Positions 3,455 to 12,446 of a stretch of DNA of 64,000 nucleotides are shown here, one piece after another. The stretch's first letter is position 1. Each line of letters begins with the position of its first letter. The notes beneath the pieces are model-generated. The model was not told where the DNA came from. It did no database searches and was given only the letters and a program-made list of their open reading frames with translations. Source of the DNA: Paramoeba atlantica (lineage: Eukaryota; Protista; Discosea); NCBI GenBank assembly GCA_977017575.1, contig CDRNVI010000051.1, positions 248,001 through 312,000 of the forward strand. Direction: 5' to 3'. The position numbers and the translations under genes are program-made.

Positions 3455-4626
3455 ATGTCATCTTATACAGTGATACCGATACATGTACCATATATACCGA
3501 TACATGTATGTATCATGAACAAGTTAGGTATCTTACCCATGAGTGTCATCTTACTTTTTGTTTTCTCTTTAGGCGATATTTTATTCTGCAATTCTATCAT
3601 GTACTGTATTATCAGAGAGCAACTCAGAGATTTTTTTCTTGAGATACGGAGAGCAAGTCCTCTTGTCGCCACGGACACTGATCTCAGACGTCTTAGCTCT
3701 TCCTTAGCTATGTGCGCTTTGAACTGCACATGGGAGCAACTGTATGATTTACAGCCCATGTGGATTGTTCCCGAAACTCCGCCTCTATCCATCAGGACTC
3801 TCCGCAATCAATTTAGCCGCATCGCTGATCTTTGCCGCTCTCGTGCTTTAATGAATCCGAAACTTCGTTTCAAGCATGGGGTATCTTGGATGTCTGACGT
3901 GACATGCATGATGGACGTCACGACAATCCCATGTCGTGCAAGGAAACCGCGGGAAGTATGGGACGAAGCCTCTCAGGAAATGAGAAAAAAAGATGCGACC
4001 TACTCCGGCAAGCACAGGGAACACTGTTTTAAAGTGGAGTTCTGGCTTACGCTTGCCGGAGTCCTTATTTTTTTTCGCGGACCCGTTCCGGGCAGTGTAC
4101 ATGATGCGAAAATTTATAAAGAAATAACCATGCACGGAACATTTCTTTTTGACCATCATGAAGATGAAATGTTTTTGGCGGATCTAGGATACGTGGGTTG
4201 CAACCACTGTTTTGTTCCATTCAAGACACCACGCAAAGGTTGCCTTGATGAACACCAGGATCGGTTCAACCGCATCCTTGGATTTGTTTGGATTGGATCC
4301 AACCGCGTTCTTGGATTCGTTCAAGAAGCGAGCGTTGTTTCGCTCATTTCGATAAATTTCGTTTTTTTCATGGAACGGACCACGATATTACGTGGGTAAA
4401 GGATGCCGTTCAGATTGTATCTGTTGCAGTGTATGGTTTGCTTGCATCAGAACCCCAATGCGACTTTGATAGTGAAATAAATGTACATTTACAAAATATC
4501 GATGACTCATCTTTTTGTTGGTGTAGCAAAGGGTGTGGTTTAGTCAAACCGATTGATGAACGGAGGGATTGGCTCAAAGAACACATATACCATATGGGAT
4601 ACATGTATGTTCCCAAGAAACCATAG
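3455..4626 (+). pseudogene. PIF/Harbinger-type transposase, copy 2, frameshifted
   Basis: Same motifs as copy 1 with an intact ADLGY. An extra stretch near 4270-4310 (ccttggatttgtttggattggatccaaccgcg) shifts the frame; the C-terminus lies in ORF 4288-4626. Confidence 0.85.
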
Positions 4627-4680
4627 CATGGATCAAAAACTAAATGAAATTTAGTATTTAATCGTTTTCCATGAATTGCG

Positions 4681-4786
4681 AAGTAATGCATGACTACCTA
4701 CAAGGAATGTTATGCACACTTCCTGTGGGAGGCTGAGGTCGGATGATACTATATACTAAGTAAGGGATGGGAAGCATGAAAGGGGG
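4681..4786. repeat. Terminal repeat A (106 bp), exact reverse complement of 10575-10680
   Basis: aagtaatgcatgactacctacaagg...gaagcatgaaaggggg versus ccccctttcatgcttccc...gtaggtagtcatgcattactt; no mismatch seen. Confidence 0.97.
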
Positions 4787-5258
4787 TCTTGTTGGTAACA
4801 AGAGCGCCTGCAATCCCCACATGCAAACGCCGCAAGTACCACTCCGGCTCCCGAAATTGTTCCGGGTACGGGGACGCAAGGCTCTCCTAGGTCCTTCACC
4901 AATGACAGAGAACACTCCGTAGTTAGCCTACCATGTGTCAATCCCACTGGGAGGGTTCCTGATCAAGCACGAGTGCCGCTTTTACGCTTTAGAGTAGTGT
5001 AGCTTTTATGTTTCGGAGGTTCTTCAATTAATTATGCATGTGTAAGCAAGAAATTTACGTAGTGAGACGTCTATGTCAATGTGTGAATGTAGATATTGTG
5101 TGGTATATAGAGCATGTATTTGTGCACCCGCTCAGGAGAAATTATTAAAGGATATTTTGTACAGTATAATGACATGCAGGACCGTAAGTGAAAGTATGAA
5201 AATAGCTGATGTCGTATTCTATTTTACGTTTGTATGCTCAGCGGATACCTAAATGTCT

Positions 5259-6992
5259 TCAGTCTCTTGATATGAATGTGAGGCCCTGTTCTGTGAAAAG
5301 TCTCCATGCTTTCTGCAAGCGTTTCCATGAATTGTACAATCTGAAGTTCAATTCATCACTAGAGAACATCCTTTTCGGACGAGTGCCTATGTCAGCTACA
5401 TTTTCTTCTGTAGGTATATCACAAATGATGAGATTACCCGCAAAGCACTCATGCTGGCTGATGACCTCGTCCAAGGGATGCACACGAGAGTACCCCTTGT
5501 CAAAAGCACGAGAAGCCGCGAGATTGTCGCTTGCGATCACCATATTAGCGTATCCATGCTCGGTAGCCATGGTGATCGCTTGTGATATGGCTGTCGCTTC
5601 TGCAAGCGCAATCGGCAGGTCGCACGACTGCTCGAGTAGGCGGTCCTTACAGATATTTCCGTTTTCCATAGGCCACACCGCCCAGCGAGAGGTGGTTGCA
5701 TCAACCGCAGTGTAGAAAACACGTTTCTTGTATGTCAATCTGGAAAACATGGCCCAGTCCCGGGGCTTATTATTCATAGAAAGAACGCGACACATTCCTG
5801 CCTGTATCAGAGACCGACATGGCTTATCAACCGGTACGCTCCAGTCGGAGATTTCGCCCAAGATACTTTGTTGCTTGGAAATTCGACCTAGATTTCTTGT
5901 CGCCACGCCCAGTATAGCGTAAGCATGACGCAAGTAACCTGCGAATTGATACAGTTTCCTTGCAGATACAATATCCATACGGCCTGCTGCAAGTGCCCAA
6001 CTCTTTACAATAACTGGGTCTGGTATCCATTTTGCCCTTCCTTCGCTTTGTATGATTTTTATGCCGCAATATGTAAACGAGCAAGTTCTATTTTCCAAAG
6101 TCATGTATTTCGTGACAACGTTGAAAAGCTTGAAATTTCGCTCAAGGCGATAATACCAATCTCTTACTGTTTGTTTACAAGATACGACTAGAAATGAGTC
6201 GTATAATAGGGCAATGAATCCTCCCTGGGATAAACTTATTAGACCTGGAGCTTCAGTGCATTCATATAAGGTTTTATCTACGTTCAAGTCGAGATCTCCC
6301 TCTTCTTCGTATAGCATTATTGCCCACATAATGCTTTGTGCAATGCCGCATGCATGCTTGTAACCCATCGGTAATACCGCGGGTCGACATATCATAGGTC
6401 CATGCTTTATACAACAGGCATGTCCAAGACCAGATGAGATCGGTATCTGGTAGTAGCAGTTGCGGATGTCCCCATGCAGAAAACAGAAACCATTCATTGC
6501 GCAATCCCCCAACCGAACTAGAGCGCGGACGAGTACTTGTGTGCTCGGCACGTGAAAGGGAACACCCTCCCCGACAACACGTTCATTGGTCCAGCGCAAG
6601 TCAAAAATTGCTCGCGAATACGTCCCATCCTTAAGTACTGCTATGTACTTTCCAAACTCTCGGGCCATCTCCTTTGTAGTCGATATCAATACCCCACATT
6701 CTTGTAGGTAACGAATGTGCCTCCTATACTGGGAGGAGTCTGGCTCAGTCTTTTCAATGTATTGGGTGTCTGGCGGCAAGGGATCAGTGCCTATAAGGGA
6801 GATTGCCTGTCGCGAAAAGGGGAAACGGTCTAGGCCTGCGCTATCTAACCGGATACCACCTACATTTTGTAGAGGGTAGAGAGTATCCGAGTCGTGTGCA
6901 AAGCTTCCGCGTCTGCGAAAATCGCTATCCTCCGGTGCGTAGTACGCATCAAAAGGGGAGGACAGTTCAGAGCTTAGAAGTTCGGTATCCAT
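5259..6992 (-). CDS. Reverse transcriptase-RNase H of the YR retrotransposon
   Basis: RT: SRAIFDLRWTN, HGDIRNCYYQIP, VLPMGY, ALLYDSFLVV (atypical YxDD position). RNase H: TAVDAT, ALAEATAI, IASDNLAA, TEENVADIGTR. Confidence 0.88.
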   Translation of the reverse strand: MDTELLSSELSSPFDAYYAPEDSDFRRRGSFAHDSDTLYPLQNVGGIRLDSAGLDRFPFSRQAISLIGTDPLPPDTQYIEKTEPDSSQYRRHIRYLQECGVLISTTKEMAREFGKYIAVLKDGTYSRAIFDLRWTNERVVGEGVPFHVPSTQVLVRALVRLGDCAMNGFCFLHGDIRNCYYQIPISSGLGHACCIKHGPMICRPAVLPMGYKHACGIAQSIMWAIMLYEEEGDLDLNVDKTLYECTEAPGLISLSQGGFIALLYDSFLVVSCKQTVRDWYYRLERNFKLFNVVTKYMTLENRTCSFTYCGIKIIQSEGRAKWIPDPVIVKSWALAAGRMDIVSARKLYQFAGYLRHAYAILGVATRNLGRISKQQSILGEISDWSVPVDKPCRSLIQAGMCRVLSMNNKPRDWAMFSRLTYKKRVFYTAVDATTSRWAVWPMENGNICKDRLLEQSCDLPIALAEATAISQAITMATEHGYANMVIASDNLAASRAFDKGYSRVHPLDEVISQHECFAGNLIICDIPTEENVADIGTRPKRMFSSDELNFRLYNSWKRLQKAWRLFTEQGLTFISRD

Positions 6993-7281
6993 TGTTTTGT
7001 GTGCGAAGTGCGTTTGAGATATAATTTATATCATATAATTTATTCTACTATGGGTGATCTATTTCCTACACAGCCACTATCTCCACATTTCTTAACTTTT
7101 ATAGTTGGTCCACTTGTCACAGTTTATTGTGACTTTTACTTCAATGACAGTGTGTAACTGTGTTCCCATATCTCTCGTCCTTCTCGATACGATTCTACTT
7201 ATCACCTGTTTAGCTAAAGTGTTCTAGTGATGCATACATTGTGTGCTTTACAATAATGGGACTGATTGTAAATTATTTATT

Positions 7282-8151
7282 TTATTCCATAGAATAACGT
7301 GTTGCAGTGAGTTCTGACATCCAGCGCCCTCTTCGAAGACGCGTGCTCAGATCAACTCCTTGCCGTGTCAAGTGTCCAGCGCAGCCGTGGCGTAGACAGT
7401 GGAACGACCATGTTTGCTGGCTGTTCCATCCAAATCGCGCGGCCGCGGCCGCTATCAAGCGATTGGCTTGCACCTTGTTCCAAGTCGGAAAGAGGCTTGA
7501 TGTTGTTGAGATTGTTTTGAAGTACCCGAGTAAATGGCGTACTTCAGGTGCTTGTACCGTATCAACGGCAAAGTGGTGACGACCTTTCCCTCCACGAATT
7601 TTTATTAGTACATCGCTTTCGCTGATTTCCACGTCTGATGTCTGAAGACCTACGAGTTCGGAGTGTCGCAAAAGGCCAAAGTAACCAATTGCAAATCCTT
7701 GACCATACGTAATCTCTCCCTGGTCAATACAATATGTGGATAGTACGCGAAGCTGGTCACGTGTGATGGAGCCCCGCGGCTTGGGGTCTAAACAAATTTT
7801 GAGCACCCCTTTAAATCGCCTTCGAAATCGAAGGGTTTGCGACCAACACTCGCTCTCTGGAAGGTCCTCAATTTGTCGCCAAACCAGGGCAGCGCGAAAT
7901 GCTTCCAAGGTGGAGGGTCTGTAAAATCTCGACATGCTAGCACATAAGGCAAGGAAATTCTCTTCTGCCATGTTGCATGCACCATGGACACCCATAAGGT
8001 GTTCCAGGCGATAAAAATATTGTGCTCGTTTTTGAGCCGTTCCCGCCGAAACGCCCACCTGAGCGAGCTGTCTATGAATTCCCACTTGAAGAAGAGAACG
8101 ATACCCTCTCTGAATTTCTGCATCCCGCGAGGTTCGAGACTCTAGTGTCAT
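7282..8151 (-). CDS. Tyrosine recombinase (YR) of the retrotransposon
   Basis: Catalytic R-K-H-R-(H/W)-Y pattern: GLLRHSEL, IRGGKG, SFHCLRHG, RGRW, ATRY. First ATG is 8151, preceded by tttctAG; the ORF is open from 8259. Confidence 0.92.
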   Translation of the reverse strand: MTLESRTSRDAEIQRGYRSLLQVGIHRQLAQVGVSAGTAQKRAQYFYRLEHLMGVHGACNMAEENFLALCASMSRFYRPSTLEAFRAALVWRQIEDLPESECWSQTLRFRRRFKGVLKICLDPKPRGSITRDQLRVLSTYCIDQGEITYGQGFAIGYFGLLRHSELVGLQTSDVEISESDVLIKIRGGKGRHHFAVDTVQAPEVRHLLGYFKTISTTSSLFPTWNKVQANRLIAAAAARFGWNSQQTWSFHCLRHGCAGHLTRQGVDLSTRLRRGRWMSELTATRYSME

Positions 8152-8501
8152 GTTGAGTGCTAGAAATGGCGGAACAATAATTACATTATACAGTATGTAG
8201 TATACGTATGATCTGGAGTTTTCATAAAGTAGACACGTACAACTGGCTACCGTGTGCAACGATTCTTAAATAGCTGAAGTATATAGGTACTTCGTAATAG
8301 AACACTTGTTTATAAATATTGTGTCGGCACACTTATCAGCACCCATAATACATTTATCGGCATCCATTTTTAGTATCTTACTACTTTTTCGGGAGTTTTT
8401 ATCAAATGTACGTGAAAAATACTTTTCTAGTGTTTGATACGAACGCTTACTTTGCTTTCCACTCGTTCTTTCATACTTATTTTCATTTTGTGGTTCAATG
8501 T

Positions 8502-9566
8502 TTATTCATCGCGCCCGCGTTTGCCATGTCTAGGGAGAAATGGTTTTTCACGGTCGCGATGTTGACTAGCTTTGCAGTTCCGGGCCTGGTGCCCCCTTTT
8601 TCCGCAGTTCCAGCACGTTCCACCAGATGTACTGGAAACCGTTTGTCTAAAGCCATAACGGGGCTTTAAGTCCGGAGGAGCGCCGCGAGCGGATGCGCGT
8701 CCTTCAAGATTCAGACTCGGACGAGAGTGATGTACCTGCGACACCGCACGTGAATGCGCGGCGAGATGCGCAACAATGGACTTGTTGCTCGTATCGACTG
8801 AATTGTCCCGCATGAGGGATTCCAGCGTTTCACGGGACACTGAGACTCCCTCGTGCCGCAGTCGATACGACATTACGATCGCACCGGGCTTGCACAACAG
8901 CGTCCACACGCTCAGACGAACCCCGTCGTCTTTCGCGTTCGCGAAGGGGACACCTGGTGGAATTTCGGTCAGTGCCTTGGCGTAGTATGCCCAGTCCAAA
9001 CGTCCTGCGGCAACGTCACAAACTTGGCGTTTGACATTCGGAGTAATCCAGGGCTCCGTGCAGAAGCCGGTCTGGGTAAGGCACGTGTGGATCGCCTCCC
9101 CGCACCGGGGGTCTTCTTGGGTCCCGATAATGGATCGAAAAGCCTCGCGGAGGTCTTTAGACGGGTGCTTCGTATTTGCTTCGGGGTGATGCGTCTGAGA
9201 GTTCACCGTAGGTTTTTCGAGAAGAGACGCCTCTTCTGCACCAAGCTCATCACGAAGCGCAACAAGGACTTGCGCGGGCACTTCGCTGCTTGCAAATGTA
9301 CCATTTTGTACTGCAGCCAACGCGAGACGAATGCTCCGCGAGCCTGGTACACTGCTGCCTCTTCCCGCGTGCGCGCACGCACGTTCTAGGAGAGGATCGA
9401 TTGGCATGCGCTCTTTCGCGAATTGGATTGCCCCGGGAATAACGGTGAGTAAATCCTGACGAACAGTCAGTCCCAGGCGTTTCATTGAGCATATTTGCTT
9501 AAATGCCTCCTCAGCCGAAACAGTGGGTGCTGCAACAGGCACCAATTCGGGGATAGCATCAGACAT
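8502..9566 (-). CDS. Gag-like protein with a CCHC zinc knuckle
   Basis: CWNCGKRGHQARNC (CX2CX4HX4C) near a basic C-terminus. First ATG is 9566; the ORF is open from 9638. Confidence 0.85.
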   Translation of the reverse strand: MSDAIPELVPVAAPTVSAEEAFKQICSMKRLGLTVRQDLLTVIPGAIQFAKERMPIDPLLERACAHAGRGSSVPGSRSIRLALAAVQNGTFASSEVPAQVLVALRDELGAEEASLLEKPTVNSQTHHPEANTKHPSKDLREAFRSIIGTQEDPRCGEAIHTCLTQTGFCTEPWITPNVKRQVCDVAAGRLDWAYYAKALTEIPPGVPFANAKDDGVRLSVWTLLCKPGAIVMSYRLRHEGVSVSRETLESLMRDNSVDTSNKSIVAHLAAHSRAVSQVHHSRPSLNLEGRASARGAPPDLKPRYGFRQTVSSTSGGTCWNCGKRGHQARNCKASQHRDREKPFLPRHGKRGRDE

Positions 9567-9881
9567 TGTAGTATTTTGAAAAACGAACAAAGACGTAAAA
9601 CATGCGTTTTTACACTGCTTACGGAGTGAGAAACTCACAGCCGATTACACATTACCTAAAGATTAATCCAACCGTAACAATATCTACATCAAGACGGGGC
9701 TATCCTTCAAATCAAGCAGCCGTGTAAGCCTAAATTAAACGATAACTTGCATCCCGTGCCGATTCTTGCAAACTAGATATTTTTGAGTCACATCACGACT
9801 CATATTACCAAAGGTTGGAGTTATTAACTCGTCACAAGGTAACCTGACGCGCCGCTTCGTACGGCATTTTCAAACGTATCA

Positions 9882-10431
9882 CAAGCTTAAAAACTGCGCT
9901 TGTAACATACAGAGCGCTTGGCGCACGATCACGGCGCTATATTCCTTGCGTTTAACGTAATTACCGAGCCAATGGGCTCATGTAGTGCGCGGCATGGCAA
10001 CTACATCACAAACTTAAAAGCTACGCTCGTAACATACAGAGCGCTTGGCGCACGATCACGGCGCTATATTCCTTACGTTCAACGTAATTACCGAGCCAAT
10101 GGGCTCATGTAGTGCTCGGCATGGCAACTACATCACAAACTTAAAAGCTACGCTCGTAACATACAGAGCGCTTGGCGCACGATCACGGCGCTATGTTCCT
10201 TACGTTCAACGTAATTACCGAGCCAATGGGCTCATGTAGTACTCGGCATGGCAACTACATCACAAACTTAAAGCTACGCTCGTAACATACAGAGCGCTTG
10301 GCGCACGATCACGGCGCTATATTCCTTACGTTCAACGTAATTACCGAGCCAATGGGCTCATGTAGTGCTCGGCATGGCAACTACATCACAAACTTAAAAG
10401 CTACGCTCGTAACACACAGAGCGCTTGGCGC
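9882..10431. repeat. 127-bp tandem array (about 4.3 units) in the 5-prime region of the YR element
   Basis: gtaaca(t/c)acagagcgcttggcgc recurs at 9902, 10029, 10156, 10282 and 10409; one unit has a 1-nt deletion. Confidence 0.97.
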
Positions 10432-10574
10432 TCGCTCGCATTACGTGTCATGGATTTTGAGAGATAAAGGAAAACATGCAATGGCAGTACGTGAAACCAG
10501 TGCTATGATATTTATCGATCTAATTATCTGCATTGTCTATAAATTTATAGATTTTTTTTTTTTTAAATACTTTC

Positions 10575-10712
10575 CCCCCTTTCATGCTTCCCATCCCTTA
10601 CTTAGTATATAGTATCATCCGACCTCAGCCTCCCACAGGAAGTGTGCATAACATTCCTTGTAGGTAGTCATGCATTACTTCCTTTCGTGGGCATCGGTCT
10701 CCTTTAACCCTG
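10575..10712. repeat. Internal complementary block (A-prime + B-prime), the inverted copy of the joined element ends
   Basis: 10575-10680 = rc(4681-4786) and 10679-10712 = rc(10833-10866). The reverse complement reads ...ccacgaaagGAAgtaatgca..., i.e. right end joined to left end. Confidence 0.95.
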
Positions 10713-10832
10713 CCGGTGCAAAGCAGAGGTCGGATGTAATCCCCCCCCTCATTCGGTCGTATTTCCCCCTAGCCTTCCATCACCTTTCCACATTTCCTGA
10801 GAAATGTGGCCCCGGGCTTTGGACCGGAATTA

Positions 10833-10866
10833 CAGGGTTAAAGGAGACCGATGCCCACGAAAGGAA
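10833..10866. repeat. Terminal repeat B (34 bp including the GAA core)
   Basis: cagggttaaaggagaccgatgcccacgaaaggaa is the exact reverse complement of 10679-10712. Confidence 0.95.
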
Positions 10867-12446
10867 ATGTAAACTACGTAGTCATATCGTATATTATGGC
10901 TTATAAATTTTTGTTATTATCGTATATTATGTACACTATGTATGTCGCACATTATGATTTCTCCTTCAATCTAACTATTTTTCTCCTTCAATGTCTGCAG
11001 CTCCGACTATTTTCGCATGCTTTCAGAGGATTTTTTTCACCCCGCGCCGAGCCCGCACCGAACCCGCGACCCTCACATGTAGTTTCAGGTGAGTTTTCGA
11101 AACAATGGTTTACAAAAGGCGTACGAACCGAATTGAGTGACAAAAGCACTAGTTTTTCCACAATTCCAAGAGGTACCCCCTGCCCCTCCCCTCCCCACCA
11201 GGGTGATCATGGCAATCTTTGAAAATTTGAAAAAAACTGAAATTTATCGGTGAAGGTAAAAAAATATTGTTTTTCCCAAATCAACTCCTAGACCGTTTTT
11301 TCAGAGTTTGGGGCCTGAAATACCTGTATACACTTTGGCTTAATTCGATACTTCTGCTCCATGTGTTGTTGGTACACCTACGGAGGCCAAACTTCAACTG
11401 GAAGTGCGTGAAAAGCAAGGCCGTAGAGGAAGGAGGAGGCGCAAGCCTAAAAGGCAGAAGGCGGAACCTTCTGTCTTTTTGCCGCCGCCACGACGACTTC
11501 CTCACGTGAGAAGCTGTAAGAGGTCCTAGGGAGCATGTTTCGATGGCTATGTAACCCAGGCTAAAGTAGACGAGGGAGACACTAAAGGCAGCTTTAGCAA
11601 ACTACCACAAAACTGGAACAGCATCTCCATTTAAAGTTTTTTTTGAAAAAAACTTAAAAAAAAATTATATTTGAGGAAAAAACACAACCCCGATGGTCGG
11701 TAAATTTTATCCGATATACACGTAGATGTAGAATAGATGTAGAACTTGCAATACGTATGTTACACACAGCGCTATGCTCAACCTTCATAGTCTGGAATAT
11801 CAACTGACTCATCCGTGTCACTTTCTTCATCACCGCTTGATTCGTGGCATATAAAAATGGTATTTGAGTTTAAAGAGTCTTAAGAAATATTCAAAGATCT
11901 AATATGGAGTAAGAATTAGGCAGCAAGACTCATTACCGGACAGAACAAGTGTATGGAAAAGCATTTCTGGTGCAAATGTTCTTCATAAACAACAAACTAC
12001 ATCAGGAAATTTATTCGTAGAACATAAATCTCAATTTACCCTCATATTAAAGCGAGTACGGCACTCAAAATGATGAGTACCGCGAGTACCGCACTCAAGT
12101 ACGGTACTCAGGTACGCACGAAAGTATCTTAAATAAGTACGTCGTTAGTGGGAAGATATTTGCGAAGCCGGAGGGCGGGGGTATCGCGAGGGGCCGAGTT
12201 AGCGGGCCTGAGCCATACGCTGCGTCGTTAGTGGGAAGCAATTTGCGATTGCCGGTTACCAACAACCACCACTTTTTAACGAGGCAGCTACCACACCGAC
12301 CTTTTTTATTCGACATGATTCCATTTATGGATTTGTTATACAAGACCCCATATAAGAAAATAAAATATCACCGGAAACCTCGGCCTATTCCGAACGATAC
12401 TTGATACAAACGTGAGAAGCAAACGGACGTGGGCAAAATATACAAT

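What the first reader, a model, noticed from the sequence alone, without database searches (positions are those of the whole stretch)
4680..10866. YR retrotransposon with split INVERTED repeats: both ends fold onto an internal circle-junction copy upstream of gag
Seen: in sense orientation the element reads Bc(34 bp) - 120 nt - B.A (138 bp) - tandem array - gag - YR - RT/RNaseH - Ac(106 bp), where c means reverse complement. The internal B.A block is exactly complementary to the two ends joined through GAA, and no mismatches were found. Established: DIRS1-type elements have ITRs plus an internal complementary region near the 3-prime end, with YR after RT; Ngaro/PAT and, as recalled, kinetoplastid VIPER/TATE (gag-YR-RT order) have split direct repeats. 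Inference: this combines VIPER/TATE gene order with a 5-prime-located complementary template, implying a different route to circularising the cDNA. It may be an undescribed YR retroelement architecture, and perfect repeat identity suggests recent activity.
Basis: partly seen in the sequence, partly recalled or inferred. Interest (0 to 1): 0.92.

Follow-up and report, generated by a model that had tools for sequence, protein, structure and literature searches.

The report
Ribozyme-headed recombinase retrotransposon, mirrored end-template
This is an intact, recently active jumping gene of a kinetoplastid protist that rebuilds both its ends from an internal template placed near its front, just after a probable self-cutting twister RNA, a layout not found in the papers searched for this group of elements.

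Summary
On the minus strand, window 4680-10866 reads Bc (34 nt), 120 nt, B.A (138 nt), 127-bp array, gag, YR, RT/RNaseH, (CAA)n, Ac (107 nt). Both arm pairs are 100% complementary and overlap by TTC.

It is not a one-off. Seven further copies in at least five diverged subfamilies of this genome share the topology. So does a metagenomic element from another assembly whose RT is about 35% identical.

1. A twister-class ribozyme motif sits at the 5' end. Its predicted cut lies 27 nt inside the element, so segment B is the template that restores those 27 nt.
2. Paralogous empty sites show precise integration that shares one GAA/TTC.
3. About half the copies lack Ac and end at (CAA)n. Three of the four Ac-less copies whose flanks could be compared carry long target duplications (about 70-95, 615 and 1415 bp).

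The inner Ac border differs between sister copies, with filler or microhomology, so Ac appears to be re-copied from A in each cycle.

The papers read on VIPER/TATE report only split direct repeats and no ribozyme on these elements. DIRS-1 has its complementary region at the 3' end.

Verdict: a new variant of a known kind (DIRS-order, VIPER-like gene order). First readers of this scan flagged related elements on other pieces of this genome (s1-399672, s1-403585). The mechanism is inferred, not shown.

The parts
4680..10866 (-). Whole element (6187 bp), including one shared GAA/TTC trinucleotide at each end
   Evidence: Boundaries are set by four near-identical copies whose flanks diverge here and by paralogous empty sites reading flank-GAA-flank.
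10833..10866 (-). Bc: the 5' terminal 34 nt, complementary to B
   Evidence: pair I2, 100%. Equivalent arms of 31-40 nt occur in 9 subfamilies (57 nt in L069), always starting at (A)CTTCC, with compensating changes.
10772..10845 (-). Twister-class ribozyme motif (P1, P2, P4, P5, pseudoknots T1/T2). Predicted cleavage U|AA falls between 10840 and 10839, 27 nt inside the element
   Evidence: Rfam twister-P1 scores 17.7 bits here, 28.8 bits at E 9e-5 in family 2, and Twister-P5 21.4 bits in another subfamily. Covariation was tested on 14 diverged copies. Own model R1 gives 92 bits here and at least 62 genome hits.
10713..10771 (-). Rest of the loop between the ribozyme and B, including a G-run and a conserved TCCGACC motif whose complement lies in A
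   Evidence: Together with A it forms a strong hairpin around the core (z -6.0).
10679..10712 (-). B: first half of the internal complementary region, complement of the 5' end
   Evidence: pair I2.
10575..10681 (-). A: second half of the internal complementary region, complement of the 3' end. It ends in a purine tract (GAAAGGGGG)
   Evidence: pair I1. The inner border differs in the sister copy on C3.
9890..10437 (-). Tandem array, about 127 bp x 4.3, between the complementary region and gag
   Evidence: family D1. Unrelated arrays sit at the same position in other families.
8502..9638 (-). gag-like ORF (378 aa) with a CCHC zinc knuckle
7282..8259 (-). Tyrosine recombinase ORF (325 aa)
   Evidence: Pfam PF00589, E 6.8e-10.
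5259..6992 (-). RT/RNaseH ORF (577 aa). RT motif C is an invariant YDS; the RNase H acidic residues are conserved
   Evidence: Alignment with 10 relatives. 465 relatives in the representative library. Atlas look-alikes are Euglenozoa clusters and RVT_1/RT_RNaseH clusters. Pfam gives only a weak RVT_3 hit.
4795..4968 (-). Conserved 3' UTR block of about 175 nt, nearly identical between families whose RT is only 49% identical; a structured RNA
   Evidence: The consensus fold has 5 pairs with compensatory changes.
4787..4794 (-). (CAA)2 microsatellite plus 2-nt filler GA. Other copies have (CAA)6-10 or (CAAA)n
4680..4786 (-). Ac: the 3' terminal 107 nt, exact complement of A. Absent from about half of the copies

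Best explanation
This is an autonomous, recently active tyrosine-recombinase retrotransposon of a kinetoplastid-type protist. It has the VIPER-like gene order gag-YR-RT/RNaseH. It restores its ends with a DIRS-1-type internal complementary region (ICR) that lies at the 5' end instead of the 3' end.

Proposed cycle; every step is inferred unless marked shown:
1. The element is transcribed as part of longer transcripts.
2. A 5' twister-class ribozyme cuts 27 nt inside the element, so the template RNA starts at AACCCUG and lacks the first 27 nt.
3. Minus-strand cDNA starts at the (CAA)n tail, downstream of a conserved structured 3' block.
4. When the cDNA reaches the RNA 5' end, its 3' end (...CAGGGTT) anneals to the copy of Bc inside the same cDNA. 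This would explain why B always reaches 5-20 nt past the cut.
5. The cDNA is extended, which restores the 27 nt, and runs on through the complement of A.
6. The extended end is joined to a (CAA)n end by template switch or end joining. This makes the circle or tandem junction ...(CAA)n-Ac|Bc....
7. The recombinase exchanges strands within the TACTTCC core with a target that shares 3-5 nt of it.

Shown: the window copy is flanked by a single shared GAA/TTC.

A second outcome joins only the Bc side at a core-like site. The (CAA)n end joins upstream DNA, which gives Ac-less copies with long target duplications.
For: Architecture:
- Exact arms in the window.
- The same topology in C3, L065, C84, C20, and the C12/C2 short copies.
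- The same topology in foreign contig L069, with 57-nt and 106-nt arms and a 3-nt overlap.

Ribozyme:
- The best Rfam hit in three separate scans is the twister clan: 17.7, 28.8 (E 9e-5) and 21.4 bits.
- 15 of the 16 bases CCGGUCCAAAGCCCGG match the twister core. The single C-to-A change is matched by a G-to-U change in its T1 pseudoknot partner (alignment; inference).
- 85% of cells are paired, against 31-57% when the partner is slid. Ten pairs change on both sides, reached by 0 of 500 shuffles.
- The motif lies about 3.5-6.5 kb upstream of, and on the same strand as, ten of the listed RT matches across families.

B arms: they end 5-9 nt past the predicted cut in 9 subfamilies and 20 nt past it in L069.

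Ac is re-made each cycle:
- A/Ac identity is 99-100% in the five copies where it was measured and 98% to a sister copy's A in the two short copies.
- The inner border and junction differ between sister copies: window GA filler, C3 about 21 nt of filler plus 5 more paired nt, L065 CAA microhomology, C20 a 10-nt slipped filler.

Integration:
- At least 15 paralogous empty sites differ from the filled site only by the element plus one GAA.
- End overlaps are TTC, TAC, CTT and AACTT, all inside the core TACTTCC.

Two outcomes: Ac-less copies C6, C56/L064 and L062 carry target duplications of 615, 1415 and about 70-95 bp, with filler or microhomology. Ac-bearing copies do not.

Precedent: the DIRS-1 complementary region is essential for retrotransposition (PMC7192593). 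Twister variants process the 5' ends of non-LTR elements in Schistosoma (PMC8501958).
Against: - No RNA or cDNA data exist for this organism here. Only DNA-type contig runs were found, so the cut, the RNA ends and any circle are unobserved.
- All twister scores are far below Rfam's gathering score of 67.2. P2 has a C.U mismatch in most copies.
- Bc/B pairs are not always perfect. C84 and L069 each have one mismatch upstream of the predicted cut. This is unexpected if that part is freshly copied, unless the mismatches arose after insertion.
- Why extension would stop after 44-157 nt of A is not explained, except by a purine tract in family 1.
- One Ac-less copy (C12:45315) shows no duplication within the 1.2 kb of upstream flank available.
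- The RT lacks the canonical YxDD motif; it has an invariant YDS. Conservation argues for function, but activity is untested.
Confidence: 0.6

Rival explanations
1. The Ac-less form is the true unit. The element would insert like a non-LTR element, by priming cDNA on a chromosomal 3'-OH at its (CAA)n tail. The recombinase or the B hairpin would then only finish the 5' end. Ac would be an occasional by-product of the polymerase running on from B into A, not a working part of a circle junction.
For: About half of the copies lack Ac. The element has a 3' microsatellite of variable length and a conserved structured 3' block. The 3' junctions show filler or microhomology together with variable target duplications. 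The (CAA)n-Ac junctions are irregular.
Against: The window copy sits in a site that differs from at least 15 empty paralogues only by the element and one GAA. That is a conservative event needing both Ac and Bc at a junction. Ac-bearing copies exist in every subfamily examined and in L069. Short non-autonomous copies keep Ac. No endonuclease domain was found in the ORFs. Tyrosine recombinases leave a 5'-OH, not a priming 3'-OH (established enzymology).
Confidence: 0.22
2. The conserved 5' motif is not a working ribozyme. It is a structured signal for packaging, a promoter or recombinase binding that happens to resemble twister. The RNA would then start at or upstream of position 1, and the Bc/B hairpin would serve only as half of the splint.
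For: Rfam scores are well below the gathering threshold. P2 is weak. The Bc-B pairing competes with twister P1/P2 for the same bases (folds the region differently). The distant relative L071 has a 113-nt 5' hairpin but no match to the motif.
Against: Three independent scans of 4227 families each pick the twister clan first. P1 covaries, and P4 and T1 are invariant. The T1 change is compensated relative to the Rfam consensus (alignment; inference). The end of the B arm tracks the predicted cut within 5-9 nt in 9 subfamilies, which a mere binding signal would not explain.
Confidence: 0.2
3. The inverted arrangement is an assembly artefact or a copy-specific rearrangement.
For: None beyond the a priori possibility. 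Perfect inverted repeats can arise from misassembly.
Against: The same topology is found in at least 7 other copies on different contigs, in a second assembly (ERZ24900291: L065) and in an unrelated short-read metagenome contig (L069). Arm sequences differ between families while their complementarity is kept.
Confidence: 0.01

Closest known systems
DIRS-1 and DIRS1-like elements (Dictyostelium and others)
   Same: Both have an internal complementary region whose first part complements the 5' terminus and whose second part complements the 3' terminus. In DIRS-1 this is 33+55 nt; here it is 34+107 nt. In both, a trinucleotide is shared by the circle junction and the target, there is no ordinary target duplication, and the genes are YR plus RT/RNaseH plus gag. 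The DIRS-1 region is experimentally essential (PMC7192593).
   Different: Here the region lies near the 5' end, upstream of gag, not next to the right repeat. There are no long inverted terminal repeats. Gene order is gag-YR-RT, not gag-RT...YR. No methyltransferase was found. This element also has a 5' ribozyme motif, a (CAA)n tail, and an Ac-less class of copies with long target duplications.
VIPER and TATE (VIPER-like elements of kinetoplastids)
   Same: Both have the gene order gag-YR-RT/RNaseH and a kinetoplastid host. The RT is divergent and barely seen by Pfam, and hepadnavirus polymerase appears among the look-alikes (compare PMC6681497). Some related copies form tandem arrays.
   Different: The published structure is split direct repeats A1 ... 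B1 A2 B2, with no complementary region and no ribozyme reported for these elements (PMC6681497, PMC12278014). Here no terminal direct repeats exist and the ends are templated by an inverted internal copy. Phylogenetic membership was not tested.
Twister-variant ribozymes at the 5' ends of Schistosoma mansoni non-LTR retrotransposons; HDV-like Pr77 of L1Tc
   Same: A small self-cleaving ribozyme at the 5' end of a retrotransposon, which would free the element RNA from read-through transcripts (PMC8501958; Pr77 as cited in PMC12278014).
   Different: Those are non-LTR elements. The cited work was not read closely enough to say where those ribozymes cut relative to the element's 5' end. Here the predicted cut lies 27 nt inside a YR element, and an internal template is available to restore the lost bases.
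Ngaro and PAT-like elements
   Same: YR retrotransposons in which terminal repeats are thought to template the completion of ends.
   Different: Their repeats are direct (split direct repeats), and YR comes after RT. Neither feature is present here.

Membership tests
DIRS order (YR retrotransposons) | Encodes RT/RNaseH and a tyrosine recombinase, with a gag-like ORF and no DDE integrase or protease | tested here: met
   Pfam PF00589 on the YR ORF and zf-CCHC on gag. The RT/RNaseH motifs are conserved among 11 relatives. The only RT-related Pfam match is a weak RVT_3 hit, and no integrase or protease match was found.
DIRS1-like superfamily | Internal complementary region exactly complementary to both outer termini | tested here: met
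   34+107 nt at 100%, with a 3-nt overlap.
DIRS1-like superfamily | Long inverted terminal repeats, with the complementary region next to the right repeat | tested here: not met
   One search finds no inverted repeat between the two terminal regions themselves. The complementary region lies 154 nt from the 5' end.
DIRS1-like superfamily | Gene order gag, RT/RNaseH, (methyltransferase), YR | tested here: not met
   The order here is gag-YR-RT/RNaseH. There is no methyltransferase match.
VIPER-like (VIPER/TATE) | Gene order gag-YR-RT/RNaseH in a kinetoplastid | tested here: met
   Gene order. The host rests on earlier notes (spliced leader, KKT proteins) and on Euglenozoa look-alikes. The host was not independently verified.
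VIPER-like (VIPER/TATE) | Split direct repeats A1 ... B1 A2 B2 | tested here: not met
   One search finds no direct terminal repeats. The only long repeats are the inverted arms and the internal 127-bp array.
VIPER-like (VIPER/TATE) | RT and YR group with VIPER/TATE in a phylogeny | not testable with these tools
   No named VIPER or TATE sequence could be retrieved.
Twister ribozyme (Rfam clan CL00120) | Reaches the Rfam gathering score | tested here: not met
   17.7 and 28.8 bits against 67.2 for twister-P1, and 21.4 against 37.6 for Twister-P5. P3 is absent and a P5 hairpin is inserted, both of which cost score.
Twister ribozyme (Rfam clan CL00120) | Conserved core (UAA cut loop, CCGGUCCCAAGCCCGG P4 loop, AAA junction) with helices P1, P2, P4 and pseudoknots T1 and T2 supported by covariation | tested here: met
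   Alignments. The pair count shows P1 with 3 covarying pairs, P4 and T1 invariant, T2 93% paired and P2 75% paired.
Twister ribozyme (Rfam clan CL00120) | Self-cleavage at the U|A step | not testable with these tools
   This needs in vitro transcription or RNA end mapping. No RNA runs were found.
Non-LTR (target-primed) retrotransposons | Endonuclease (APE or RLE), 3' tail and variable target duplications | tested here: inconclusive
   The 3' microsatellite and variable duplications are present in Ac-less copies. No endonuclease domain was found, and the Ac-bearing window copy integrated conservatively.

The most novel reading that the evidence does not exclude
A clade of YR retroelements in free-living kinetoplastids uses a self-cleaving twister ribozyme to define its RNA 5' end. 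It repairs the resulting 27-nt loss from a 5'-located complementary region. It also completes integration by two routes: conservative circle integration at a 3-5-nt core, and a one-ended recombinase event whose other end is repaired with 0.1-1.4 kb target duplications. This would be a fifth end-architecture in the DIRS order and the first report of a ribozyme on a YR retrotransposon that I could find.
Probability: 0.45. Interest if true: 0.85.

Novelty: new variant of a known kind. Interest (0 to 1): 0.8.

Why it matters
How YR retrotransposons complete their ends is still largely a paper model. Only DIRS-1 has been tested, and the primer and the circle have never been seen there.

This family offers a mirror-image natural experiment:
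- The lost 5' bases are defined to the nucleotide by a predicted ribozyme cut.
- The templating segment ends just past that cut.
- The junction scars (filler, microhomology, variable Ac border) record how the cDNA ends were joined.
- Empty sites show the crossover core.

It would also extend ribozyme-processed retroelements from non-LTR elements to the YR class. It shows that VIPER-like gene order and a DIRS-type complementary region can occur together, which bears on the modular evolution of the order. The Ac-less copies with long target duplications point to an unrecognised, error-prone integration outcome for tyrosine recombinases.

Tried and rejected
I worked from about 3-5 kb loci plus small targeted fetches.
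- Naming relatives failed. The 10 word-search hits and the 10 clusters looked up carry no names. No RT/YR tree against DIRS, Ngaro, PAT, VIPER or TATE could therefore be built.
- Pfam does not recognise the RT at E 0.01. Only a weak RVT_3 match appears.
- Rfam at gathering thresholds finds nothing in the window. The 3' end has no Rfam match even at E 10.
- The single-sequence fold of the 3' block is not better than shuffles (z -1.27). Its case rests on conservation and 5 compensated pairs.
- Two metagenome pattern scans for the ribozyme core gave zero and then seven GC-rich partial matches without the full motif. They say nothing about distribution.
- Read laying was not used. Only Logan contigs of one study hold the element, and no RNA run does. 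Contigs cannot show RNA ends or rare circles, and the element plus both flanks exceeds the 6,000-letter limit.
- L062 first looked like a different topology, with an A-like arm upstream of Bc. This was rejected: the flank is a separate palindromic repeat that is duplicated at the 3' side.
- The hairpin-ended snap-back dimer was considered as the integration substrate. It was set aside because it predicts inverted dimers, which were not seen.

Full report
**Observation**

- Arms 4680-4786 and 10575-10681 are 107 nt and 100% complementary.
- Arms 10679-10712 and 10833-10866 are 34 nt, 100% complementary, and 120 nt apart.
- The two internal arms overlap by three bases. The 138-nt internal block is therefore the exact reverse complement of the 3' end joined to the 5' end through one TTC.

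On the minus strand lie three ORFs:
- a gag-like ORF with a CCHC knuckle (9638-8502),
- a tyrosine recombinase (8259-7282; PF00589, E 6.8e-10),
- a 577-aa RT/RNaseH ORF (6992-5259).

A 127-bp x 4 array (9890-10437) sits between the internal block and gag.

The genome (45.7 Mb, 248 contigs) holds four copies at 99-100% identity, on C51 (this window), C6, C56 and C3. It also holds families whose RT is about 67, 50, 35 and 30% identical. All four young copies share the 5' boundary TTCCTTTCG.

The topology Bc, loop, B.A ... Ac recurs in these copies:
- C3, in family 1.
- L065, which is C53: arms of 39 and 157 nt, both 100%, with a 3-nt overlap.
- C84: arms of 37 and 111 nt.
- C20: arms of 40 and 114 nt.
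- Two 3.8-kb copies on C12 and C2, for which no RT match was listed.
- L069, a contig of another assembly from a different metagenome, with an RT about 35% identical. Its arms are 57 nt (96%) and 106 nt (100%), again with a 3-nt overlap.

Arm sequences differ between families while complementarity is kept. The arrangement is therefore a selected family trait. It is neither a rearrangement nor a misassembly.

**A ribozyme at the 5' end**

The 5' ends of diverged families share a nearly invariant stretch.

Rfam evidence:
- A scan of the window's 5' region at relaxed thresholds puts twister-P1 first among 4227 families (17.7 bits).
- The family-2 copy scores 28.8 bits at E 9e-5 over the full model.
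- A third subfamily hits Twister-P5 (21.4 bits).
- All three scores are below Rfam's gathering thresholds. P3 is missing and a variable P5 hairpin is inserted.

Sequence match: CCGGUCCAAAGCCCGG matches 15 of the 16 bases of the twister core. By my reading of the alignment, the single C-to-A change is matched by a G-to-U change in its T1 pseudoknot partner.

Covariation on an alignment of 14 diverged copies, using the twister structure:
- 85% of cells are paired, against 31-57% when the partners are slid.
- Ten pairs change on both sides, a count reached by 0 of 500 shuffles.
- P1 has three covarying pairs. P4 and T1 are invariant.
- P2 is the weak point, at 75% paired.

Distribution: a covariance model built from this alignment finds at least 62 matches in the genome. 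Ten of the listed RT matches have such a match about 3.5-6.5 kb upstream on the same strand, including one copy of the 30%-identity family. L069 also matches, at 39 bits.

By the known twister geometry, the cut falls at U|AA. That is between window 10840 and 10839, 27 nt inside the element. The template RNA would then lack the first 27 nt.

B is the only internal copy of those 27 nt. In nine subfamilies the Bc/B arm runs from the element's first base to just 5-9 nt past the predicted cut; in L069 it runs 20 nt past.

This gives the 5' position of the complementary region a rationale. The 3' end of the minus-strand cDNA (...CAGGGTT) can anneal to the internal Bc copy in the same cDNA and be extended to restore the lost bases. 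This step is inferred. It is the mirror image of the Cappello model for DIRS-1, whose complementary region is experimentally essential (PMC7192593).

**The 3' end and the origin of Ac**

Upstream of Ac lies a block of about 175 nt that is almost identical between families whose RT is only 49% identical. It is followed by (CAA)n or (CAAA)n of variable length. The consensus fold of the block has five pairs with compensatory changes.

The join between the microsatellite and Ac is irregular:
- The window copy has (CAA)2 plus GA.
- Sister copy C3 has (CAA)6, about 21 nt of filler, and an Ac that pairs 5 nt further into the region.
- L065 shows a CAA microhomology.
- C20 shows a 10-nt slipped filler.

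A and Ac are 99-100% identical in the five copies where the pair was measured directly. In the two short copies, Ac was compared only with a sister copy's A and matched at 98%. I read this as Ac being copied afresh from A in each cycle and joined to a (CAA)n end by template switching or end joining. That step is inference.

**Integration**

The window copy lies inside a DDE_Tnp_4 DNA transposon. At least 15 paralogous copies of that transposon have the two flanks separated by exactly three bases, GAA. The filled site differs only by the element plus one GAA. Integration was therefore conservative and site-specific, as proposed for DIRS elements.

In other copies the shared bases are TAC (C3, C84), CTT (L065) and AACTT (C20). 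All lie inside the junction core TACTTCC. This suggests a crossover region of about 7 bp that needs only partial identity with the target.

**A second class of copies**

Six of the twelve distinct 3' ends in hand lack Ac and stop at the microsatellite: C6, C56, C12:45315, C83 (L062), C15 and C53:679236. Their 5' boundary is the normal one where it could be checked.

In three of the four whose flanks could be compared, the 3' flank is a direct copy of the DNA immediately upstream of the 5' junction:
- C6: 615 bp, after 19 nt of filler.
- C56 (also seen as L064): 1415 bp, with an AC microhomology.
- L062: about 70-95 bp, after 20 nt of filler.

The fourth, C12:45315, shows no duplication within the 1.2 kb of upstream flank available. 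Ac-bearing copies show no such duplication.

The simplest reading is a one-ended event. The Bc side is joined at a core-like site, and the (CAA)n end is joined or primed upstream, so the interval is duplicated. The mechanism could be break-induced repair after recombination on a linear substrate, or priming on a chromosomal 3' end. It is open. The second option is the main rival reading of the whole element.

**Comparison with what is known**

- DIRS-1 has inverted terminal repeats and an 88-nt complementary region (33+55) beside the right repeat. Its YR is not placed between gag and RT (PMC7192593).
- VIPER and TATE share the gag-YR-RT order and the host group. As recently as 2025 they are described as having split direct repeats A1...B1A2B2, and no ribozyme is reported on them (PMC6681497, PMC12278014).
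- Twister variants are known at the 5' ends of Schistosoma non-LTR elements (PMC8501958).
- Full-text searches found no paper that links a ribozyme to a YR retrotransposon, or twister to kinetoplastids.

The element therefore passes the DIRS-order test. It fails defining features of both DIRS1-like elements (position of the region, ITRs, gene order) and VIPER-like elements (direct repeats).

Its RT belongs to a small, unnamed group with 465 representatives. The nearest Atlas clusters are from Euglenozoa. A formal phylogeny could not be made.

**Limits**

No RNA data exist for this organism in the runs reachable here. Cleavage, RNA ends, cDNA forms and circles are all unobserved. The kinetoplastid identity rests on earlier notes of this scan and on Atlas taxa, not on a test of mine. 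First readers of this scan flagged related elements on other pieces of this genome (s1-399672, s1-403585), and another read of this same stretch noted the 3-bp core (s1-396344).

**Verdict**

- It is a new variant of a known kind.
- The architecture is near-certain, the ribozyme is probable (about 0.75), and the full replication scheme is plausible (about 0.6).

Noticed in passing
window 3455-4679 and 10867-11075: The element is inserted in a DNA transposon with a DDE_Tnp_4 ORF (3455-4399, plus strand). At least 20 paralogous copies at 90-95% identity exist in the genome. At least 15 of them show the uninterrupted site ...gaattgc GAA atgtaaac....
   Followed up: partly
L062:5538-5632 and 12157-12295; also the 3' flanks in L040, L041 and L066: A dispersed palindromic repeat with 41-nt arms and a 29-nt loop containing GTGACTTCTAA recurs next to several family-2 copies. 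It appears with its loop in both orientations. It may be a preferred target that carries the ACTTC core.
   Followed up: partly
G000:C6:141382-141996 and at least 40 other places: The C6 copy sits in a very young high-copy repeat, with at least 40 copies at 99-100% identity and spaced several kb apart on some contigs. Its nature was not determined.
   Followed up: no
G000:C54:646342, 652873, 659401; C99:50396, 56914: Related ribozyme-headed elements lie head to tail at about 6.5-kb spacing. The copy held as L023/L024 has no B arm within 1.5 kb. Tandem units cut by the ribozyme would need no internal template. This is a possible link to the tandem TATE arrays.
   Followed up: no
window 5259-6992 (minus strand), residues around 'ALLYDSFLVV': RT motif C is an invariant YDS, in place of YxDD, across 11 relatives down to 30% identity. 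This is an unusual catalytic motif that appears to be under selection.
   Followed up: partly
G000:C19:81718, C43:229827, C45:202662, C54:210681 and at least 10 more: A second tier of ribozyme-model hits (33-38 bits, many with identical scores) is not near any listed RT match. They may belong to another repeat family that carries a twister-like motif.
   Followed up: no
G000:C12:1042276-1046077 and C2:921429-925141: Elements of about 3.8 kb keep Bc, the ribozyme, B.A and a 44-nt Ac, but no RT match is listed for them. They are probably non-autonomous derivatives, which would argue that the ends act in cis.
   Followed up: partly
window 10575-10736 (minus strand): The complementary region folds on its own into a strong hairpin (DNA, z -6.0). 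In it the core GGAAGT pairs with a second ACTTCC 40 nt into A, closed by a conserved TCCGACC/GGTCGGA stem found in all families.
   Followed up: partly
L071:81-193 and 968-1080: A more distant metagenomic relative has a 113-nt-arm hairpin (96%) upstream of gag. It has no match to the ribozyme model, and no terminal complement was detected on the 6.6-kb contig.
   Followed up: no
G000:C51:195478-195576: An isolated Ac-like segment matches A of a related subfamily at 83%, starting exactly at the B/A border, about 53 kb from this window. It is probably the 3' end of another element.
   Followed up: no
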